Below, in pieces: positions 8,217 through 63,405 of a DNA stretch of 64,000 nucleotides. The notes under the pieces were generated by a model, which had not been told where the DNA came from, ran no database searches, and saw only the letters and a list, made by a program, of their open reading frames with translations. The DNA lies in the IMG/VR virus record IMGVR_UViG_3300027759_004177, positions 124,001 to 188,000 of that record; one strand, 5' to 3'. How positions within the stretch are numbered: the stretch's first letter is position 1; every line of letters begins with the position of its first letter. The translations under genes were made by a program, and so were the position numbers.

Positions 8217-8235
8217 GGTGTAAGTGGTATAGTAT

Positions 8236-10414: not shown

Positions 10415-10843
10415 TTAGTTGGCCTCGTAAGCGGCTTTGAGTTTTTTCATAAACTCAGCACGGATCTTGGCCGCTTGTTTGGGAGTGTACGGAGCATCAT
10501 CTTCACCAACTGATGTAGAGCCAATAACAAGACGTGGCTTGGTAACTTTGACGGTGCGTGGCTTGGCCGGCTTCTTGGGTTTTGCAAACGGATTTTCATC
10601 CTTGATCAAGCCAGTAAGCAGGCCTGTGGCTTCAGGCGTATTGAACTTGGGGTAAGAAATTGCCAAGTTGGTAAGAACATACTTGGCGGCGTCATTTTTA
10701 GTCATTGGGGTTGGCAATATTGCCATACTGATGTCTGTGTCACCTAACTTGGCCAACTGTTGGGCACGACTAATGTCGTTGGCAGTACGGAATTTTAACG
10801 CACCGTCGACACGGCTAAAACCTGCGAATTGAACTGTACTCAT
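10415..10843 (-). CDS. Basic early protein (possible nucleic-acid binder)
   Basis: AAGGAGC RBS; sigma70 promoter at 10873-10901; Lys/Pro-rich linker. Confidence 0.75.
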   Translation of the reverse strand: MSTVQFAGFSRVDGALKFRTANDISRAQQLAKLGDTDISMAILPTPMTKNDAAKYVLTNLAISYPKFNTPEATGLLTGLIKDENPFAKPKKPAKPRTVKVTKPRLVIGSTSVGEDDAPYTPKQAAKIRAEFMKKLKAAYEAN

Positions 10844-40974: not shown

Positions 40975-42149
40975 ACTTCTGGTCCTTTAGTGTTTTTATT
41001 ATACACATCTTTAGTGAAGTACACAACCTTTTCGGCGGCCTGTATCCACATCTGTCTGTCGCCACCATACAGCATACCAGCACCGCTGACCATGAGTGGA
41101 ATACGTTCAACTGGTTGTTTGGGTATTTTACTGGTATAGACGATTTTGGTATTGCTGTCAATGATATTGTTTGCACTCTTGTTGGTAAAATTAACTATTT
41201 GGTCAGGAAAGAACTTTGTGAATTCCGCTAACAGTCTACCACTCAGGTCAGGTTCATACACAAATATAGGAAATCTACAGGTAAGTTCTGCATAATCAAT
41301 CAAGTCTTTGATCAAGTTACCAGAAGTACCGGTATCCACTTTGAGCTGACGGTTAGCACACAGACTCCAAAATCTGGTATTAAAGTTTCTAATTACATCT
41401 GTTTCTATGTCTTTGTGTACCGAATATCCCAGCACAGGAGCATGGTCGCACAAGGTAAGAATGTTGCTTAACGCAAATCCACCCAAGGAATCGGTCACAT
41501 AATCTATCAAACTTGCTTCGGCATTGGCCACAGTTAGTCCTTGATTGGCATACTGCAATTCAATCTTGAAGTCTGTTTGTTCTGTTGCCAATACCAATTT
41601 CATCAGATCTTTGACGCTGACGTCAATGTTAAAATTGTGTTGTTGGGCAAATGCATGAATCCAGTTCAAATTCCATTCAGTCAGTGCGGCTTCGTGTATT
41701 CTAGTGTCTCGATTGTATTTAAACGACCCTTTGCTTTCTTTGGTGGCTGTTCTTACTGTGTCTATCAATTCTGGATCGTAAGGAAATTTAAGTTTGATTG
41801 TGTCGGTTTCAACCCAGACTCGAGTACTGCGGTCAATTTCTCTGATGGGCAATCGGTATTGAGGTGTGCGGACCGGCTCTACATCAATGCCAAGTTTAAA
41901 TAATTGTCGTTCGTATTTTAGCACCAAATCCGCGGCCAACCGGGCCTGCTTGTCAGTGTAGCCCTTGTTTTGTCCCAGTGTCTGTTCAGCCAAGCTGGGT
42001 ACAATTTTCATATCGTATCTGGCCAGGCTAATCGGACTTTCGCTCACTGTGAAAATACTGTAGTTGCTTTTACCGTCGGGCTTGCGATAACCGGCAATGA
42101 TTTCAATGTAGTCTTCCACGTGAGGATGTTTAAATAATGTCAGTGCCAT
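40959..42149 (-). CDS. Hypothetical protein (start MALTLF)
   Basis: TTGATT-N17-TACAAT promoter (42156-42184) 6 nt upstream; HARP-like LKFPYD..LID segment. Confidence 0.7.
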   Translation of the reverse strand: MALTLFKHPHVEDYIEIIAGYRKPDGKSNYSIFTVSESPISLARYDMKIVPSLAEQTLGQNKGYTDKQARLAADLVLKYERQLFKLGIDVEPVRTPQYRLPIREIDRSTRVWVETDTIKLKFPYDPELIDTVRTATKESKGSFKYNRDTRIHEAALTEWNLNWIHAFAQQHNFNIDVSVKDLMKLVLATEQTDFKIELQYANQGLTVANAEASLIDYVTDSLGGFALSNILTLCDHAPVLGYSVHKDIETDVIRNFNTRFWSLCANRQLKVDTGTSGNLIKDLIDYAELTCRFPIFVYEPDLSGRLLAEFTKFFPDQIVNFTNKSANNIIDSNTKIVYTSKIPKQPVERIPLMVSGAGMLYGGDRQMWIQAAEKVVYFTKDVYNKNTKGPEVCKLN

Positions 42150-42185
42150 GTTGCTATTGTAACATATATTTACAGCAAAATCAAA

Positions 42186-42219
42186 TAAAAAAATCCCCGA
42201 GCGATTAAACCCGGGGATT
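42186..42219 (-). terminator. Rho-independent terminator of the AAA+ ATPase transcript
   Basis: aatccccggg...ctcggggatt plus T-run. Confidence 0.85.
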
Positions 42220-42225
42220 GTCAAA

Positions 42226-42277
42226 CCATAACTCAGGAGCTAAAAAGAGTCATGGGCCACAGTCTAGGTGACTGTGG
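42226..42277 (-). ncRNA. Structured 3'-UTR element with anti-Shine-Dalgarno loop
   Basis: Hairpins ccacagtc/gactgtgg and ccatgactc/gagttatgg, the latter with loop UUUUUAGCUCCU. Confidence 0.55.
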
Positions 42278-42284
42278 AAACCGT

Positions 42285-43331
42285 TTATGCTGCGGCCTTC
42301 ATACAAGTTACTTCGGCCATGGCCTTCCATTTGAGTGGGAAACTCTTACGCAAGTCTGCAATCTTGATAGCCATACGCAGGCTCATTTCGCGGAACTTGT
42401 TCTTGTTGGACTCAAGGAACTCAATGATTTCATCTTGTTCACATTGAGCAAAATCGTACTCTGCAAACAACTCACCATCTTTGGCAATCTGCTTGATACG
42501 GAGTACCTTGTCACGCATGGTGTCAAGAGTCAAGTCAAGATAGTGACAACGACTTTGTAATGCATCCAAGTGATCACGCAACTTCTGGCTTTTCATTTGA
42601 TCAAACTTGAGGTTGGTGATAAACACCACAGAGCCATTGAAGTTGAAGCTGTCTGGAATGCCTTCGCGACGCAACAAACTGCTATCACTCAACCACGAAA
42701 TCTTACGCTTCTTACCCGAGTCCAAGGCGCCTTTGAGCAGGTTCAAGGCCACGTCATCCAGCAAGATACTGTCACAGTCATCAAACACCAACATACAGTT
42801 GGCATCTGAATACTTGTAGAGTGTACTGTACAAACCTAGGGCAGTGGCTGAACCTTTGACAACTTCGGCACGGAGACGCTTGCCTGAGATCTGATCAAAC
42901 AAACAGGCCTTTTCAACGATGCGTTCTACACCAAACGATTTACCAACGCCCGGAGGACCTGATACGATCATGGCACGGATCTCGCCATTGGTGGCGGCCG
43001 TGGTCATTTCATCCAATATTTCAAAACGCTGACGGATACGCTCAATCACTTGTTCGTCACTTTCGGCTGCTGTTTCAAGTGCAATGGCTTCAGCCACAGG
43101 AGTGTTACCAGCTTCAACAAAATCTGCTTCTGTTACAAAATCGTAGTCACTCATGCCATCAACCTTGACACGGATTTCTTCTGGAAAGCCAGGAAACCGG
43201 CCACCATTTTTGACAGTGACATAGCCACCTTTGGCTGTATTTTTATATTGTTCTACCAATTGGAATACCTGACCGCTCACATCTGTTGTGCGATATGCGC
43301 CAGATTTAATGCGAATAAATGATACTGACAT
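42285..43331 (-). CDS. AAA+/P-loop ATPase (early)
   Basis: GPPGVGKS, VFDDCD, FITN, ALQSRC; AAGGAGCTAA RBS; start MSVSF. Confidence 0.85.
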   Translation of the reverse strand: MSVSFIRIKSGAYRTTDVSGQVFQLVEQYKNTAKGGYVTVKNGGRFPGFPEEIRVKVDGMSDYDFVTEADFVEAGNTPVAEAIALETAAESDEQVIERIRQRFEILDEMTTAATNGEIRAMIVSGPPGVGKSFGVERIVEKACLFDQISGKRLRAEVVKGSATALGLYSTLYKYSDANCMLVFDDCDSILLDDVALNLLKGALDSGKKRKISWLSDSSLLRREGIPDSFNFNGSVVFITNLKFDQMKSQKLRDHLDALQSRCHYLDLTLDTMRDKVLRIKQIAKDGELFAEYDFAQCEQDEIIEFLESNKNKFREMSLRMAIKIADLRKSFPLKWKAMAEVTCMKAAA

Positions 43332-43362
43332 ACTTAGCTCCTTCTTTATTAACAATACAACT

Positions 43363-43391
43363 ATTATACATTAATGGGAATTATTGGTCAA
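43363..43391 (-). promoter_or_regulatory. sigma70-type early promoter
   Basis: TTGACC-N17-TATAAT. Confidence 0.88.
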
Positions 43392-43579: not shown

Positions 43580-43797
43580 AATAGTTTTATTGTTAATCCA
43601 ATTGAGTAAATCATTAATAATCCAAGATTAACTGTGATCATTGCACGGTCACGAATCAATATGGCCCATATTAAAAATATGAAACTGCCTGCATTTAATA
43701 CAATGGCCGAATATGGATATATTCCCAAACTGGCCAATACTGCACCCGATAATGTCACTGCGGTGGCAGTCCATTTTATTATATTAACGGTGTTCAT
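43576..43797 (-). CDS. Small three-TM membrane protein
   Basis: IKW.AT, IYPY, hydrophobic helices. Confidence 0.7.
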   Translation of the reverse strand: MNTVNIIKWTATAVTLSGAVLASLGIYPYSAIVLNAGSFIFLIWAILIRDRAMITVNLGLLMIYSIGLTIKLL

Positions 43798-44261
43798 TAA
43801 TTAAAATATTGAAAGTACGTTTTTTCTGCTTCGATACGTCTTTTTTCAATTTGTTGAATTAATAATAGACTTGAATACAACTGAGTATTATCCACTCCAT
43901 GCTCTTTGTATCCTTCCATTAACATTTCTAAATATCCATCGCTGGGATATTCGTCGGGTAAATCTCCGGTCATATAATATGTCATACATTCCACTGATTT
44001 ACCATTATGTAATACACGAACCGTCTTCTTTAGATAATATGCAGGATAACCCTCTAGGGCATCTAATGCCAGTTCGCAATCAGCAGTAATTTCCCATAAT
44101 ACTCCCTGAGTAACAAACTCAGGATCAGTAATTATGTCCGCATGACGTGCAAAACGGAATTCATGTCCCATTAATGTGGCTCGGCCCAAACTCTGAGCTT
44201 TGGGGCAACGACTAGCCATTTGGGAGGTGTTGGTATTCATACCATATGCGAAATATTTCAT
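43797..44261 (-). CDS. Gamma-glutamylcyclotransferase (AIG2-like)
   Basis: YFAYGMN, M..RCP, GVLWEI, LDALEGYP..Y, PS..YL. Confidence 0.88.
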   Translation of the reverse strand: MKYFAYGMNTNTSQMASRCPKAQSLGRATLMGHEFRFARHADIITDPEFVTQGVLWEITADCELALDALEGYPAYYLKKTVRVLHNGKSVECMTYYMTGDLPDEYPSDGYLEMLMEGYKEHGVDNTQLYSSLLLIQQIEKRRIEAEKTYFQYFN

Positions 44262-44267
44262 AATACA

Positions 44268-44296
44268 ATTATATATTAAAAGGATTTATTGGTCAA
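44268..44296 (-). promoter_or_regulatory. sigma70-type promoter giving a near-leaderless mRNA
   Basis: TTGACC-N17-TATAAT, 6 nt before the ATG. Confidence 0.85.
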
Positions 44297-44339: not shown

Positions 44340-45962
<1,623 letters not shown>

Positions 45963-53790: not shown

Positions 53791-54602
53791 TGGAACACAT
53801 TTTTAAACTGCCGCCTATCAGGCAAGCCTACAGCAACGATTATACACAGTATGGTCGTCCGGGTGTGATTGGTTATTGGTTTGAAATGGATCATCCCTAT
53901 GAAGGGCATAGAGATTTTAGTCAAACCCTAGATATCTACCTAAATGACTACAACTGGAGTAAAATACTCAAATCTGGCACCACCATAGTAGACATTGGTG
54001 CACACAGTGGAGATACTGCTGTACCCATGATGGCCATGAGTGGCTATTGTGTACTGACTGTAGAATGTAATCCTACCATATATCCTTGGTTGGAGTTTGC
54101 CTGCAACATGAATCGCCATCTGGGCAAGTTTGTGGTTGCCAGTGAAGCTGTGACCACAGAAGATGACGTCACAGTAACATTCAGTGATCACAACAACGGT
54201 ATGTGTAACGGAGGCCTAGTAAATCATAACTGGGGCATCGGCGCTGGATCAGGTTCTATTGATGTGCCGGGTATCCGGTTAGAAACCCTGTGTCGTAGAT
54301 ATTTAAATGCGGAAGAAATTGCCCGCATTGATCTTATCAAGGTTGACACCGAGGGTCATGATTTTGTAATATTAGACAGTAGCCGTGAGTTTATTGACAG
54401 CTTACGTCCAAAGTTGTTTGTAGAGTGGTTTAGTGGCTTTGGCACAGAAGAAGTCCGGCGTATGTTTGATATTGTTGCCAGCATGGACTATGTTCCGTTA
54501 TATCCAAAAACATTCGAGACAGCTGATCCAGCTCGACCCAGCGAAGATTTGTTGTTGATACACAGTACAAAATTACAAGAGTTTTTACAAGAAGTACGAT
54601 AA
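53787..54602 (+). CDS. FkbM-family methyltransferase
   Basis: VDIGAHSG, IKVDTEGHD, P.LFVE. Confidence 0.88.
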   Translation: MMEHIFKLPPIRQAYSNDYTQYGRPGVIGYWFEMDHPYEGHRDFSQTLDIYLNDYNWSKILKSGTTIVDIGAHSGDTAVPMMAMSGYCVLTVECNPTIYPWLEFACNMNRHLGKFVVASEAVTTEDDVTVTFSDHNNGMCNGGLVNHNWGIGAGSGSIDVPGIRLETLCRRYLNAEEIARIDLIKVDTEGHDFVILDSSREFIDSLRPKLFVEWFSGFGTEEVRRMFDIVASMDYVPLYPKTFETADPARPSEDLLLIHSTKLQEFLQEVR

Positions 54603-55438
54603 TGAAAATTTTAATCACCGGCACCACAGGATTTTTAGGACGCAGCCTGGCCGACTATTTTGGTACCACTCACGAGGTCATTGAACACACCAGAACCAGT
54701 GTTAGACTCAGTGGAGCCATTTACATACACAAACCCGACCTAATCATTCATTGTGCTGGCGAAATATACAAGGCCGACGTCATGTACAATACCAATGTTG
54801 GCATGGTCAACGAAATACTGGAAAGTGTGCGTGAATACTGTCCTGGTTGCCGAGTTATACAGATAGGTAGCAGCGCCGAATATGGCCCAATGAATCGTGC
54901 TACATCAGAAACAGATCCAATCAATCCAGTGGACGTGTACCAAGCCACCAAAGGTGCAGCCACCCTGTTGTGTCAGGCCTATGCCCGACAGTACGGGCTT
55001 AAAACCATGGTGGCCCGCATATACTCAGGTTATGGCATACACGAAAGACCACACAGGTTATTTCCCACACTATATCGTGCGTTTTTCAATGATGAGCCAA
55101 TGACCTTGTATCAAGGCTATCACGACTTTATCTACATTGAAGACTTTGTACGTGCCATAGATCAAGTCAAAGATTTTGTTTGGGAACCAGGTGAAATCAT
55201 AAACTTTGGCTCCGGTCGACAGCACAGCAATTTTGAAGTACTAGAAGCCTGGGAACGAGTTACTGGACGTACAGCACCAGTAGAAAAACGTGATCAACTC
55301 AGTAAGGCTTACGAAAGTACAGTATGGGTATGTGACAACACCAAATTACGCCTGCGATGTGGAGTCCAACTACAATATGACTTGGACGCAGGCATACAAG
55401 ATTTTATAAAGAAAATGCAAAATGTTAAAACAAATTAA
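54602..55438 (+). CDS. NAD-dependent epimerase/reductase
   Basis: TGTTGFLG, GSSAEYG, YQATK, DFIYIED. Confidence 0.9.
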   Translation: MKILITGTTGFLGRSLADYFGTTHEVIEHTRTSVRLSGAIYIHKPDLIIHCAGEIYKADVMYNTNVGMVNEILESVREYCPGCRVIQIGSSAEYGPMNRATSETDPINPVDVYQATKGAATLLCQAYARQYGLKTMVARIYSGYGIHERPHRLFPTLYRAFFNDEPMTLYQGYHDFIYIEDFVRAIDQVKDFVWEPGEIINFGSGRQHSNFEVLEAWERVTGRTAPVEKRDQLSKAYESTVWVCDNTKLRLRCGVQLQYDLDAGIQDFIKKMQNVKTN

Positions 55439-59718: not shown

Positions 59719-59792
59719 TGGTGCCCCTTGACAGAATCGAACTGCCAATTGATGATTACAAATCAACTGTTATACCATTTAACTAAAGGGGC
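59719..59792 (-). tRNA. tRNA-Thr(UGU)
   Basis: GCCCCTT acceptor stem, loop TTTGTAA, GTTCGATTC T-loop, encoded CCA. Confidence 0.93.
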
Positions 59793-63315: not shown

Positions 63316-63405
63316 TGGCGGAGAGTGTGAGATTCGAACTCACGATAGTGTTGCCACTATGCCGGTTTAGTAGACCGGTGCCTTCAGCCGCTCGGCCAAC
63401 TCTCC
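63316..63405 (-). tRNA. tRNA-Ser with ACU anticodon
   Basis: GGAGAG acceptor stem, long variable arm, G73, encoded CCA; stem CCGGT/ACCGG with loop CTACTAA. Confidence 0.9.

What the first reader, a model, noticed from the sequence alone, without database searches (positions are those of the whole stretch)
42186..43391. 3'-UTR hairpin loop exactly complementary to the same mRNA's ribosome-binding site
Seen: the AAA+ ATPase transcript is bounded by a consensus promoter (43363-43391) and a terminator (42186-42219). Its 3' UTR folds into hairpin 1 (42257-42277) and hairpin 2 (42226-42255). Hairpin 2 is a 9-bp stem with a G-U pair that forms only on the minus strand, and its 12-nt loop is UUUUUAGCUCCU. 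The loop's UUAGCUCCU is the perfect complement of AGGAGCUAA at 43334-43342, the gene's own SD plus spacer. AGGAGC also forms the SD of the early gene at 10843. Inference: a self-silencing mRNA, translated only until its 3' end is made, or a 3'-UTR-derived anti-SD sRNA that shuts off SD-led early or host mRNAs while leaderless phage mRNAs escape. I am not aware of this having been described.
Basis: partly seen in the sequence, partly recalled or inferred. Interest (0 to 1): 0.8.

Follow-up and report, generated by a model that had tools for sequence, protein, structure and literature searches.

The report
Operon-end RNA loop pairing its own ribosome site
In a large family of uncultured freshwater jumbo phages, the tail of one early messenger RNA carries a short sequence that matches the ribosome-binding site of its first gene and has changed in step with it, so it most likely limits that gene's translation, as already shown for the bacterial icaR mRNA.

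Summary

The complementarity is not chance. In about 90 distinct relatives (IMG/VR and MAG contigs, 66-100% protein identity), the operon that begins with this P-loop ATPase gene (a T4 NrdC.10 homologue) ends in an element complementary to that gene's RBS. The element sits just 5' of the terminator, even when up to 4.7 kb of extra genes are inserted.

The two sites co-vary:
- AGGAGCUA(A/G) pairs with (U/C)UAGCUCCU.
- GGAGCCAAC pairs with GUUGGCUCC.
- AAGGAGCC pairs with GGCUCCUU.
- GAGUUAGU pairs with ACUAACUC.
- ACACGGA pairs with UCCGUGU.
- UUAAUCCACA pairs with UGUGGAUUAA.

Own pairings beat permuted pairings in 0 of 20,000 shuffles. The hairpin stem shows compensatory changes in 8 of 9 pairs. 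Full-length mRNA folds predict RBS to 3'-UTR pairing in about 29 of 33 relatives.

The best reading is a selected RNA-RNA interaction that occludes the RBS. I could not resolve whether it acts on the same mRNA or through a 3'-derived fragment.

The mechanism type is already known (S. aureus icaR, B. subtilis long-range anti-SD sequences), so this is a new, unusually well-supported phage member of a known kind. The idea of a global shut-off of SD-led mRNAs is not supported.

The parts
44268..44296 (-). Upstream sigma-70-like promoter (TTGACC-17-TATAAT), preceded by a terminator at 44320-44301. There is no terminator between it and the ATPase gene, so a longer transcript isoform probably also carries the RBS and the 3' element.
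   Evidence: 11/12 match
43363..43391 (-). Proximal promoter TTGACC-17-TATAAT of the ATPase transcript. It is part of a conserved promoter and leader cassette.
   Evidence: conserved in relatives; a near-identical cassette lies at 10897-10844
43332..43356 (-). Predicted A/U-rich 5' UTR. The transcription start is inferred, not mapped.
   Evidence: weak local structure, -3.2 kcal/mol
43334..43342 (-). AGGAGCUAA: the Shine-Dalgarno sequence plus spacer. This is the target of the 3' loop.
   Evidence: AGGAGCUA(A/G) is conserved in 47 of 90 distinct leaders, and the other clades carry co-varying variants
42285..43331 (-). Gene for a 348-aa P-loop/AAA-like ATPase of unknown function (phrog_1250). 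It is the homologue of T4 NrdC.10 and PA5oct EST35_0359.
42257..42277 (-). Hairpin 1 of the 3' UTR. It is not conserved in relatives and is probably not part of the functional core.
42226..42255 (-). Hairpin 2: a 9-bp stem (one G-U pair) with a 12-nt loop. The stem is conserved through compensatory changes.
   Evidence: alignment A1 and pair counts: 100% of cells paired, 8 of 9 pairs with changes on both sides, G-U pairs present, no A-C cells
42235..42243 (-). Anti-RBS UUAGCUCCU on the 3' side of the loop (loop = 42235-42246). It is a perfect complement of 43334-43342.
   Evidence: duplex -14.0 kcal/mol; loop about 100% unpaired; UAGCUCC is invariant in A1
42186..42219 (-). Intrinsic terminator that ends the operon. 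In all relatives that have the anti-RBS element, it lies directly 5' of this terminator.
42147..42184 (-). Context only: the next promoter (TTGATT-17-TACAAT, with TG) and an ATG 6 nt after the -10 box, which is an apparently leaderless 396-aa gene. It is not needed for the element, because clades that lack this neighbour keep the element.

Best explanation
The operon that starts with the NrdC.10-like ATPase gene ends with an 'anti-RBS' element. In the window this is the loop of hairpin 2, placed just before the terminator.

Once transcribed, the element base-pairs with the Shine-Dalgarno and spacer region of the first cistron, about 10 bp spanning -1 to +8 relative to GGAG. In some relatives the start-codon region pairs as well. 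The duplex competes with 30S binding, so translation of the ATPase is limited to a burst. A ribosome-free mRNA is then probably degraded faster.

Pairing probably nucleates at the pre-stacked 3' side of the loop (a YUAG-CUCC seed) and can extend by opening hairpin 2.

Shown here: the sequences, the RNA hairpin, the complementarity, its conservation and covariation, and favourable thermodynamics.

Inferred: that the duplex forms in vivo, that it represses rather than protects, and that it acts within the same molecule.
For: 1. The anatomy is confirmed.

2. In 80 + 80 IMG/VR loci and 3 MAG contigs, the RBS motif and a complementary 3' element recur. The element always lies directly 5' of the operon's terminator, at +24 to +4746 nt from the ATPase stop codon.

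3. Compensatory switches occur between clades:
- GGAGCCAAC(C) with (G)GUUGGCUCC
- AAGGAGCC with GGCUCCUU
- GAGUUAGU with ACUAACUC
- (G/U)ACACGGA with UCCGUGU(U/A)
- UUAAUCCACA with UGUGGAUUAA
- AGGGGCUA with UAGCUCCC

4. Statistics on 48 protein clusters, with the 3' region defined only by the first terminator:
- The longest Watson-Crick run averages 8.29 for own pairings against 7.07 +/- 0.17 for permuted pairings (0 of 20,000). The composition control averages 5.25.
- Duplex energy averages -16.35 for own pairings against -14.22 +/- 0.35 for permuted (0 of 20,000). The reversed-sequence control gives -11.1.
- The per-position table shows pairing confined to -1..+8 around GGAG, with several pair types at +5, +7 and +8.

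5. RBS position +8 (A or G) against the loop base 5' of UAGCUCC (U or C) gives 17/4/5/13, Fisher p = 0.0013. In phylogenetically independent pairs the loop base changes the same way about 3.8 times and the opposite way 0 times.

6. GGAGCU in the RBS against AGCUCC near a terminator gives a 28/1/6/19 table.

7. The hairpin stem is 100% paired, 8 of 9 pairs show double changes, and mismatches are G-U but never A-C. This places the structure in RNA of the sense strand.

8. The full-length mRNA MFE and centroid fold of the window pair the RBS with the loop region. The same holds in about 29 of 33 monocistronic relatives. Swapping 3' UTRs between clades drops the paired 5'-UTR nucleotides from 12.8 to 3.9.

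9. The loop-RBS duplex is -14.0 kcal/mol, against -8.0 for the RBS with a generic 16S 3' end.

10. Specificity: the element and the matching RBS are unique within 10 kb on either side (apart from one 7-nt AGGAGCT RBS in L156). A second operon with the same leader cassette shows no conserved 5'/3' match.

11. Precedent for the mechanism exists: PMC3868564 and PMC12697547.
Against: There is no expression, structure-probing or transcript-end data.

- Repression, as opposed to protection of the mRNA, is inferred only by analogy.
- Cis and trans action make the same comparative predictions.
- Some relatives keep the AGGAGCUA RBS without a detectable element (L089). Others show weak or no complementarity (L092, L057, L143, L132).
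- Extending the inter-site duplex by G-U pairs is no better than extending it by A-C pairs (9.25 vs 9.08). The strand of the inter-site pairing is therefore supported only by the hairpin stem.
- A 9-10-bp helix inside a 12-nt loop is sterically strained unless the stem opens.
- The phylogenetically corrected test on the single A/G position is underpowered (median p = 0.125).
- T4 nrdC.10 shows no such element. The PA5oct homologue shows only an unverified 8-nt match between its RBS spacer and the hairpin after its stop codon.
Confidence: 0.7

Rival explanations
1. The base pairing is the same, but it acts in trans. The hairpin-2 plus terminator module is released or accumulates as a stable 3'-UTR-derived small RNA. 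Its loop seed represses newly made ATPase mRNAs (negative feedback) and perhaps a few other mRNAs with an AGGAGCUA-type RBS.
For: - The element always stays attached to the terminator, whatever is inserted after the ATPase gene. More than 15 different gene arrangements show this.
- The architecture is seed hairpin, then a U-rich linker, then a terminator with a U tail. This is the usual build of 3'-derived sRNAs.
- The best, though sub-threshold, Rfam matches are sRNAs with CU-rich loops plus a terminator: RF02278 and RF02837 (PMC5688073).
- In some relatives the homologue of the gene at 10843 also has AGGAGCUAG or AGGAGCUAA.
Against: - No promoter-like site lies upstream of the hairpin within the gene's 3' end.
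- No fragment data exist.
- No second matching RBS lies within 10 kb on either side in 48 loci.
- Folds of the single molecule already predict the pairing.
- This is not exclusive of cis action.
Confidence: 0.3
2. The 5'/3' pairing protects rather than represses. By covering the SD region or closing the mRNA ends, it shields the transcript from an endonuclease, as in B. subtilis hbs or against a T4 RegB-like GGAG-specific nuclease. This would stabilise the early mRNA.
For: - A 14-bp 5'/3'-UTR interaction modulates RNase Y cleavage in hbs (PMC5737220).
- The predicted closing helix in the window spans about 23 bp across both mRNA ends.
- T4-type phages do cleave GGAG in early SDs with RegB (own knowledge).
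Against: - The duplex always overlaps the 30S footprint, so it must at least compete with initiation.
- Experimentally placed anti-SD-like sequences promote decay (PMC12697547).
- No RegB-like gene was looked for or found here.
Confidence: 0.12
3. One reading: a global anti-SD RNA that silences SD-led early or host mRNAs, while leaderless phage mRNAs escape.
For: - The loop contains CUCCU, which is complementary to any AGGAG SD.
- Only 23 AGGAG sites lie on the coding strand of the window, and several genes look leaderless.
Against: - Selection acts on gene-specific positions beyond the SD core: the spacer CUA(A/G), CCAAC, or even a stretch upstream of the SD in L138.
- Some clades have elements that hardly touch the SD core (L103, L098, L138).
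- Five base pairs with other SDs would be far weaker than the 9-11 bp formed with the element's own RBS.
- The 10843-family RBS spacers vary freely.
Confidence: 0.05
4. A DNA-level feature: AGGAGCTA and TAGCTCCT are an inverted repeat bound by one DNA-binding protein (looping or recombination sites that flank the operon). Alternatively, the loop is the RBS of an antisense ORF.
For: - In double-stranded DNA the two sites are the same sequence in inverted orientation.
- On the plus strand, AGGAGCTAA precedes an ATG at 42252 that opens a 102-aa ORF.
Against: - The repeat changes to unrelated sequences in different clades while staying complementary. That would need repeated protein co-evolution.
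- The motif is displayed in the loop of a hairpin whose stem co-varies with G-U but no A-C pairs. This indicates RNA of the sense strand.
- The antisense ATG is absent in most relatives, for example those with CTGTGATTC or CTGTAGTTC stems.
- Nine base pairs are too few for homogenisation by recombination.
Confidence: 0.03
5. A chance complementarity with no function.
For: A single 9-nt match found by eye in 64 kb is post hoc.
Against: Conservation, clade-specific compensatory switches and the permutation tests all argue against it.
Confidence: 0.02

Closest known systems
icaR mRNA of Staphylococcus aureus: 3'-UTR UCCCCUG motif pairing with its own Shine-Dalgarno region (Ruiz de los Mozos et al. 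2013, PMC3868564)
   Same: An anti-SD sequence in the 3' UTR is complementary to the SD region of the same transcript. The proposed outcome is a block of the initiation complex and faster decay.
   Different: - The present case is in a phage, not a bacterium.
- The target is the first cistron of an operon that can be up to about 5 kb long.
- The motif sits in a hairpin loop directly before the terminator.
- The pairing covers the SD plus the gene-specific spacer.
- It is supported here by wide covariation but by no experiment.
- Involvement of RNase III is unknown.
Long-range anti-SD-like sequences in Bacillus subtilis mRNAs (Gill et al. 2025 preprint, PMC12697547)
   Same: Pyrimidine-rich anti-SD-like octamers hundreds of nucleotides downstream pair with the RBS, inhibit initiation and promote decay.
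   Different: In that study such sequences are artificial inserts and are depleted from natural genes. Here a natural one is positively conserved and co-evolves with its RBS.
B. subtilis hbs mRNA 14-bp 5'/3'-UTR interaction (Braun et al. 2017, PMC5737220)
   Same: A long-range helix between the two UTRs of one bacterial-type mRNA affects access to the 5' region.
   Different: In hbs the helix modulates an RNase Y site and helps couple stability to translation. It is not an anti-SD repressor.
Rfam RF02278 (Betaproteobacteria 'toxic' small RNA) and RF02837 (anti-hemB)
   Same: Both have a hairpin with a CU-rich (anti-SD-like) loop followed by a rho-independent terminator (PMC5688073). They are the best Rfam matches to 42185-42279.
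   Different: The scores are 22.7 and 22.1 bits against gathering scores of 50 and 49.5. The match reflects shared architecture, not homology. Those RNAs are free-standing sRNA genes.
Antisense-RNA loops with a YUNR U-turn (hok/sok, CopA/CopT) and C-rich loops of S. aureus RNAIII/RsaE that bind SDs (own knowledge, not checked in the library)
   Same: The seed is displayed on the 3' side of a hairpin loop. The conserved start YUAG fits the YUNR pattern. Loop-to-linear pairing onto an SD can then extend.
   Different: Those are separate antisense or trans-acting genes. Here the seed is part of the 3' end of the target's own transcript.
RBS sequestration in phage mRNAs: T4 gene e / I-TevI early transcripts, and the long-distance interactions of MS2/Qbeta (own knowledge)
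   Same: Phage translation is controlled by base-pairing of an RBS with another part of the same RNA.
   Different: In T4 the masking hairpin is local. In RNA phages the partner lies in an upstream coding region. None of them uses an operon-terminal loop.

Membership tests
icaR-type 5'/3'-UTR anti-SD interaction (works-like class, not a homologous family) | The 3' UTR contains a sequence complementary to the SD region of the same transcript | tested here: met
   There is a 9-nt perfect complement in the window. The runs are 7-11 nt in 41 of 48 clusters of relatives. No intrinsic terminator was detected between the gene and the element.
icaR-type 5'/3'-UTR anti-SD interaction (works-like class, not a homologous family) | The complementarity is maintained by selection (conservation or covariation) | tested here: met
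icaR-type 5'/3'-UTR anti-SD interaction (works-like class, not a homologous family) | The pairing blocks formation of the 30S initiation complex and lowers protein output | not testable with these tools
   Only thermodynamics is available: -14.0 kcal/mol against -8.0 for a generic anti-SD, and the RBS is paired in the full-length folds.
icaR-type 5'/3'-UTR anti-SD interaction (works-like class, not a homologous family) | The duplex is a substrate for RNase III | not testable with these tools
   The core duplex of about 10 bp is short for RNase III. The extended helix in the window is about 23 bp with internal loops.
Rfam RF02278 Betaproteobacteria toxic sRNA | Covariance-model score at or above the gathering score (50 bits) | tested here: not met
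   22.7 bits
Rfam RF02837 anti-hemB | Covariance-model score at or above the gathering score (49.5 bits) | tested here: not met
   22.1 bits
3'-UTR-derived small RNA | A conserved seed upstream of a rho-independent terminator with a U tail | tested here: met
3'-UTR-derived small RNA | A discrete stable 3' fragment, made from an internal promoter or by processing | tested here: inconclusive
   No consensus promoter lies upstream of the hairpin inside the gene's 3' end. Processing cannot be assessed, and no transcript data exist.
Intrinsic (rho-independent) terminator | A G+C-rich stem-loop followed by a T run | tested here: met
   42219-42192 plus TTTTTTT: 11 pairs, 6 of them G-C
Structured RNA hairpin (as opposed to a DNA palindrome) | Compensatory changes in the stem, with G-U tolerated and A-C not | tested here: met
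   A1: 198 of 198 cells are paired, 8 of 9 pairs have double changes, G-U/U-G cells are present and A-C cells number 0. The slid-partner controls give 24-38% paired.

The most novel reading that the evidence does not exclude
The hairpin-plus-terminator module is a phage-encoded, 3'-end-derived riboregulator. It would be cut or left over from the early operon transcript and would accumulate during infection. Through a U-turn-type loop seed it would titrate the RBS of new ATPase mRNAs, and in some genomes the RBS of other early-cassette genes with AGGAGCUA. This would be a timer or feedback device that has co-evolved with its target across a whole clade of uncultured freshwater jumbo phages. It would be the first phage 3'-UTR sRNA class defined by covariation with its target site.
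Probability: 0.3. Interest if true: 0.75.

Novelty: new member of a known kind. Interest (0 to 1): 0.6.

Why it matters
Regulation of bacterial-type mRNAs by their own 3' UTRs rests on very few cases. icaR is called a 'singular example' by its authors. Those cases have almost no comparative support.

Here a natural anti-RBS element has been kept, and has co-evolved with its target, across dozens of diverged phage genomes and through many gene insertions. That is the kind of evidence usually available only for riboswitches and rRNA.

The case offers:
- a clean, small, testable system (about 30 nt of 5' UTR and about 30 nt of hairpin) for asking whether long-range RBS occlusion works in cis or in trans;
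- natural 'compensatory mutant' series for reporter assays;
- a first indication that large phages use 3'-end elements to restrict an early gene;
- evidence that the T4 NrdC.10-like ATPase needs tight dosage or timing control.

Tried and rejected
- **GenBank phage DNA search:** no match. The family is uncultured.
- **Rfam:** only sub-threshold matches that reflect architecture. The alternative 3' element of some relatives has no match.
- **Second 5'/3' pair in the window:** the operon from 10843 to the terminator at 8220 has GTATAGTA/TACTATAC, 8 nt. This match is not conserved in 44 relatives. I rejected it and used it as a negative control.
- **G-U versus A-C extension of the inter-site duplex,** used to assign the strand: not discriminating.
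- **Crude count of any complement of 7 nt or more in any hairpin:** not informative, because A/T-rich leaders match often (392 real hits against 323 control hits). I replaced it with terminator-anchored tests.
- **Cultured relatives:** PA5oct shows only an 8-nt match between its RBS spacer and the stem of the hairpin after its stop codon. T4 nrdC.10 shows none. The element therefore seems restricted to this lineage.
- **Antisense ORF at 42252(+):** its start codon is not conserved, so it is rejected.
- **Link to the downstream leaderless 396-aa gene:** rejected, because clades that lack that neighbour keep the element.
- **Function of the ATPase:** only P-loop/AAA-level hits.
- **Host:** MAG bins disagree (Polynucleobacter, Haliscomenobacter, Nitrospinaceae). 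No conclusion.
Full report
**1. The observation**

- A promoter TTGACC-17-TATAAT lies at 43391-43363, scoring 11/12 in the consensus scan.
- A short A/U-rich leader follows, with AGGAGCUAA at 43342-43334 and the AUG at 43331.
- A 348-codon ORF ends at 42285.
- Hairpin 1 is at 42277-42257.
- Hairpin 2 is at 42255-42226. It has 9 bp, including G42251-U42230, and the loop UUUUUAGCUCCU.
- A terminator follows at 42219-42192 plus a T run.

The 3' UTR folds into exactly these three hairpins, with z = -5.7. The loop is about 100% unpaired in the ensemble. AGGAGCTAA occurs only at the RBS and, as its reverse complement, in the loop. No other gene in the window uses AGGAGCT as an RBS.

No terminator lies between an upstream promoter at 44296-44268 and this gene, so a longer isoform probably exists.

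**2. What the gene and genome are**

The protein is a P-loop/AAA-like ATPase of unknown function.
- Pfam AAA matches only weakly, and the PHROGs family is phrog_1250.
- It is about 42% identical to EST35_0359 of Pseudomonas jumbo phage PA5oct.
- It is about 34% identical to proteins of many T4-like phages.
- It is 30% identical to T4 NrdC.10.

There is no DNA match in GenBank phages. The window is part of a 357-kb IMG/VR contig. IMG/VR holds hundreds of relatives. Three MAG contigs also carry the gene, in bins that disagree on taxonomy.

**3. The comparative result**

In relatives with 66-100% protein identity, the promoter and the RBS are conserved. A hairpin whose loop carries YUAGCUCCU recurs.

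When one to several genes are inserted after the ATPase gene, the hairpin is not left behind. It is found at the end of the operon, directly 5' of the terminator, at +24 to +4746 nt from the ATPase stop codon.

The element follows the ATPase operon, not the downstream leaderless 396-aa gene. Clades without that neighbour still have the element.

Within 48 loci of about 18 kb each, UAGCUCC in a hairpin loop occurs only there. Only one other AGGAGCU-type RBS turns up within 10 kb on either side, a 7-nt match in L156.

**4. Covariation**

*Hairpin stem.* In 23 aligned sequences all 198 cells are paired. Eight of nine pairs show changes on both sides. G-U pairs occur but A-C never does. Controls with slid partners give 24-38% paired. 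This is an RNA structure of the transcribed strand.

*RBS against the 3' element.* Flanking bases co-vary within the main type:
- ...CUAA with UUAG... and ...CUAG with CUAG...
- ACAGGAGCU with AGCUCCUGU
- AAAGGAGCU with AGCUCCUUU
- UAGGAGCUAAA with UUUAGCUCCUA

Whole clades have switched both partners:
- GGAGCCAAC(C) with (G)GUUGGCUCC
- AAGGAGCC with GGCUCCUU
- GAGUUAGU with ACUAACUC
- AGGGGCUA with UAGCUCCC
- (G/U)ACACGGA with UCCGUGU(U/A), in clades with a short unstructured 3' UTR
- UUAAUCCACA with UGUGGAUUAA, in the same kind of clade

*Statistics.* The 3' region was defined only by the first intrinsic terminator, with one representative for each of 48 protein clusters.
- The longest Watson-Crick run averages 8.29 for own pairings against 7.07 +/- 0.17 for permuted pairings (0 of 20,000). 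A composition control gives 5.25.
- Duplex energy averages -16.35 for own pairings against -14.22 +/- 0.35 for permuted (0 of 20,000). A reversed-sequence control gives -11.1.
- Anchored on GGAG/CUCC, pairing is confined to positions -1 to +8, with several pair types at +5, +7 and +8, and falls to background outside that span.
- For the A/G position, Fisher p = 0.0013. On the tree, independent contrasts never go the wrong way, but there are too few of them for significance.
- GGAGCU in the RBS and AGCUCC near a terminator co-occur in a 28/1/6/19 table.

**5. Thermodynamics**

The loop-RBS duplex is -14.0 kcal/mol, against -8.0 for the RBS with a generic 16S 3' end.

The MFE and centroid folds of the full 1.17-kb mRNA pair the RBS (10 bp) and neighbouring leader segments with the hairpin-2 region, at the expense of hairpin 2.

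The same long-range pairing appears in about 29 of 33 distinct monocistronic relatives. Exchanging 3' UTRs between clades lowers the number of paired leader nucleotides from 12.8 to 3.9.

**6. Controls and exceptions**

A second operon in the window has a near-identical promoter and leader cassette and an 8-nt 5'/3' match. That match is not conserved in 44 relatives. The spacer after AGGAG in that gene family varies freely. This shows that the constraint on the ATPase RBS spacer is specific.

Exceptions exist. L089 keeps the RBS but has no element. L092, L057, L143 and L132 show weak or no complementarity. Several loci were too short to reach the operon end. T4 has no such element, and PA5oct shows only an unverified 8-nt match.

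**7. Mechanism**

Every version of the duplex overlaps the 30S footprint. The simplest reading is competition with initiation once the 3' end has been made. That would give a burst of translation followed by silencing and probably faster decay. This has been shown for icaR (PMC3868564) and for anti-SD-like sequences placed far downstream in B. subtilis (PMC12697547).

The conserved YUAG at the 5' edge of the seed fits the YUNR U-turn motif of antisense loops (own knowledge). This suggests nucleation in the loop, followed by extension as the stem opens.

Cis and trans action cannot be separated with sequence alone.
- The invariable attachment of the element to the terminator and the sRNA-like build favour a 3'-derived fragment.
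- The absence of a promoter, the uniqueness of the target and the single-molecule folds favour cis action.
- A protective role, as in hbs (PMC5737220), is possible but less likely.

A global anti-SD role, a DNA-level repeat, an antisense ORF and chance are each disfavoured, for the reasons given under the rival explanations.

**8. Comparison and novelty**

No Rfam family matches. The best hits are RF02278 at 22.7 bits and RF02837 at 22.1 bits, below gathering scores of 50 and 49.5. My limited literature search found no phage example.

I file it as a new member of a known kind. It is notable for the depth of its covariation, for its loop display next to the terminator, and for acting at operon scale.

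**9. Verdict**

- Probability that the RNA pairing is real and selected: about 0.9.
- Probability that it represses translation: about 0.7.
- Cis versus trans: open.
- Interest: 0.6.

Noticed in passing
window 43391-43332, 10897-10844 and 44296-44262 (minus strand): A conserved promoter and leader cassette: T(T/A)GACCAATAA(T/A)TCC..TATAAT, then A(G/C)TTGTAT(T/A)GT.A.TAATAAGGAGC. It drives the ATPase gene and the 142-aa gene at 10843. A shortened form drives a leaderless GGACT-family gene at 44261. The cassette is conserved in relatives of both genes and is probably the early-promoter class of this phage group.
   Followed up: partly
window 42149, 44261, 32758 (minus-strand start codons): Apparently leaderless genes: the ATG lies 6-7 nt after a -10 hexamer (TACAAT, TATAAT, TATACT) with no SD. 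Only 23 AGGAG sites lie on the main coding strand of the 64 kb.
   Followed up: no
L048, L059, L060, L061, L063, L068, L069: the 60-95 nt directly after the ATPase stop codon: A different conserved element: CCCCUGCCGUGUGCGUAAC(N)GGC, then a variable insert, then AAGUCC(N)GUUUCGAUAA. It has a co-varying ACNGG/CCNGU helix and gives no Rfam match. Its function is unknown. L068 and L069 also carry the anti-RBS hairpin at the operon end.
   Followed up: partly
window 8236-8190 and 10866-10859 (minus strand): An 8-nt complementarity lies between the start of the leader of the gene at 10843 (GUAUAGUA) and the 3' UTR before the terminator at 8220 (UACUAUAC). It is not conserved in 44 relatives. The 3' part overlaps a semi-conserved UAAAUAC motif.
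   Followed up: yes
L081/L162 (Pseudomonas phage PA5oct, MK797984, 248.7-249.95 kb): The homologous gene EST35_0359 has its own TTGACT..TATACT promoter. Its RBS spacer AGUAGCAU is complementary to the 3' arm of the hairpin that lies 21 nt after its stop codon. This could be a remote analogue or chance. PA5oct has published RNA-seq data that could be checked.
   Followed up: partly
L207 (phage T4, nrdC.10, 54343-55320): The T4 homologue is NrdC.10, a hypothetical protein. It also sits behind a terminator with its own promoter and is followed by a 94-nt spacer with a hairpin, but no complementarity to its RBS was evident.
   Followed up: partly
window 44340-45959 and 43797-44261 (minus strand): A phage-encoded GroEL-type chaperonin (Pfam Cpn60_TCP1, E = 5.6e-75) and a gamma-glutamyl cyclotransferase-like (GGACT/AIG2) protein lie just upstream.
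   Followed up: no
window 59719-59792 and 63316-63405 (minus strand): Two tRNA genes: tRNA-Thr(UGU) and a tRNA-Ser with anticodon ACU, which is unusual.
   Followed up: no
window upstream of 4477, 8153, 35695 and others (minus strand): ATAAATA(C) motifs 15-30 nt before start codons. They resemble the T4 late promoter TATAAATA.
   Followed up: no
L208, L209, L210 (MAG contigs): Contigs carrying this phage gene are binned into MAGs named Haliscomenobacter, Nitrospinaceae and Polynucleobacter. They are probably phage contigs mis-binned or bound to hosts, and they give no consistent host call.
   Followed up: no
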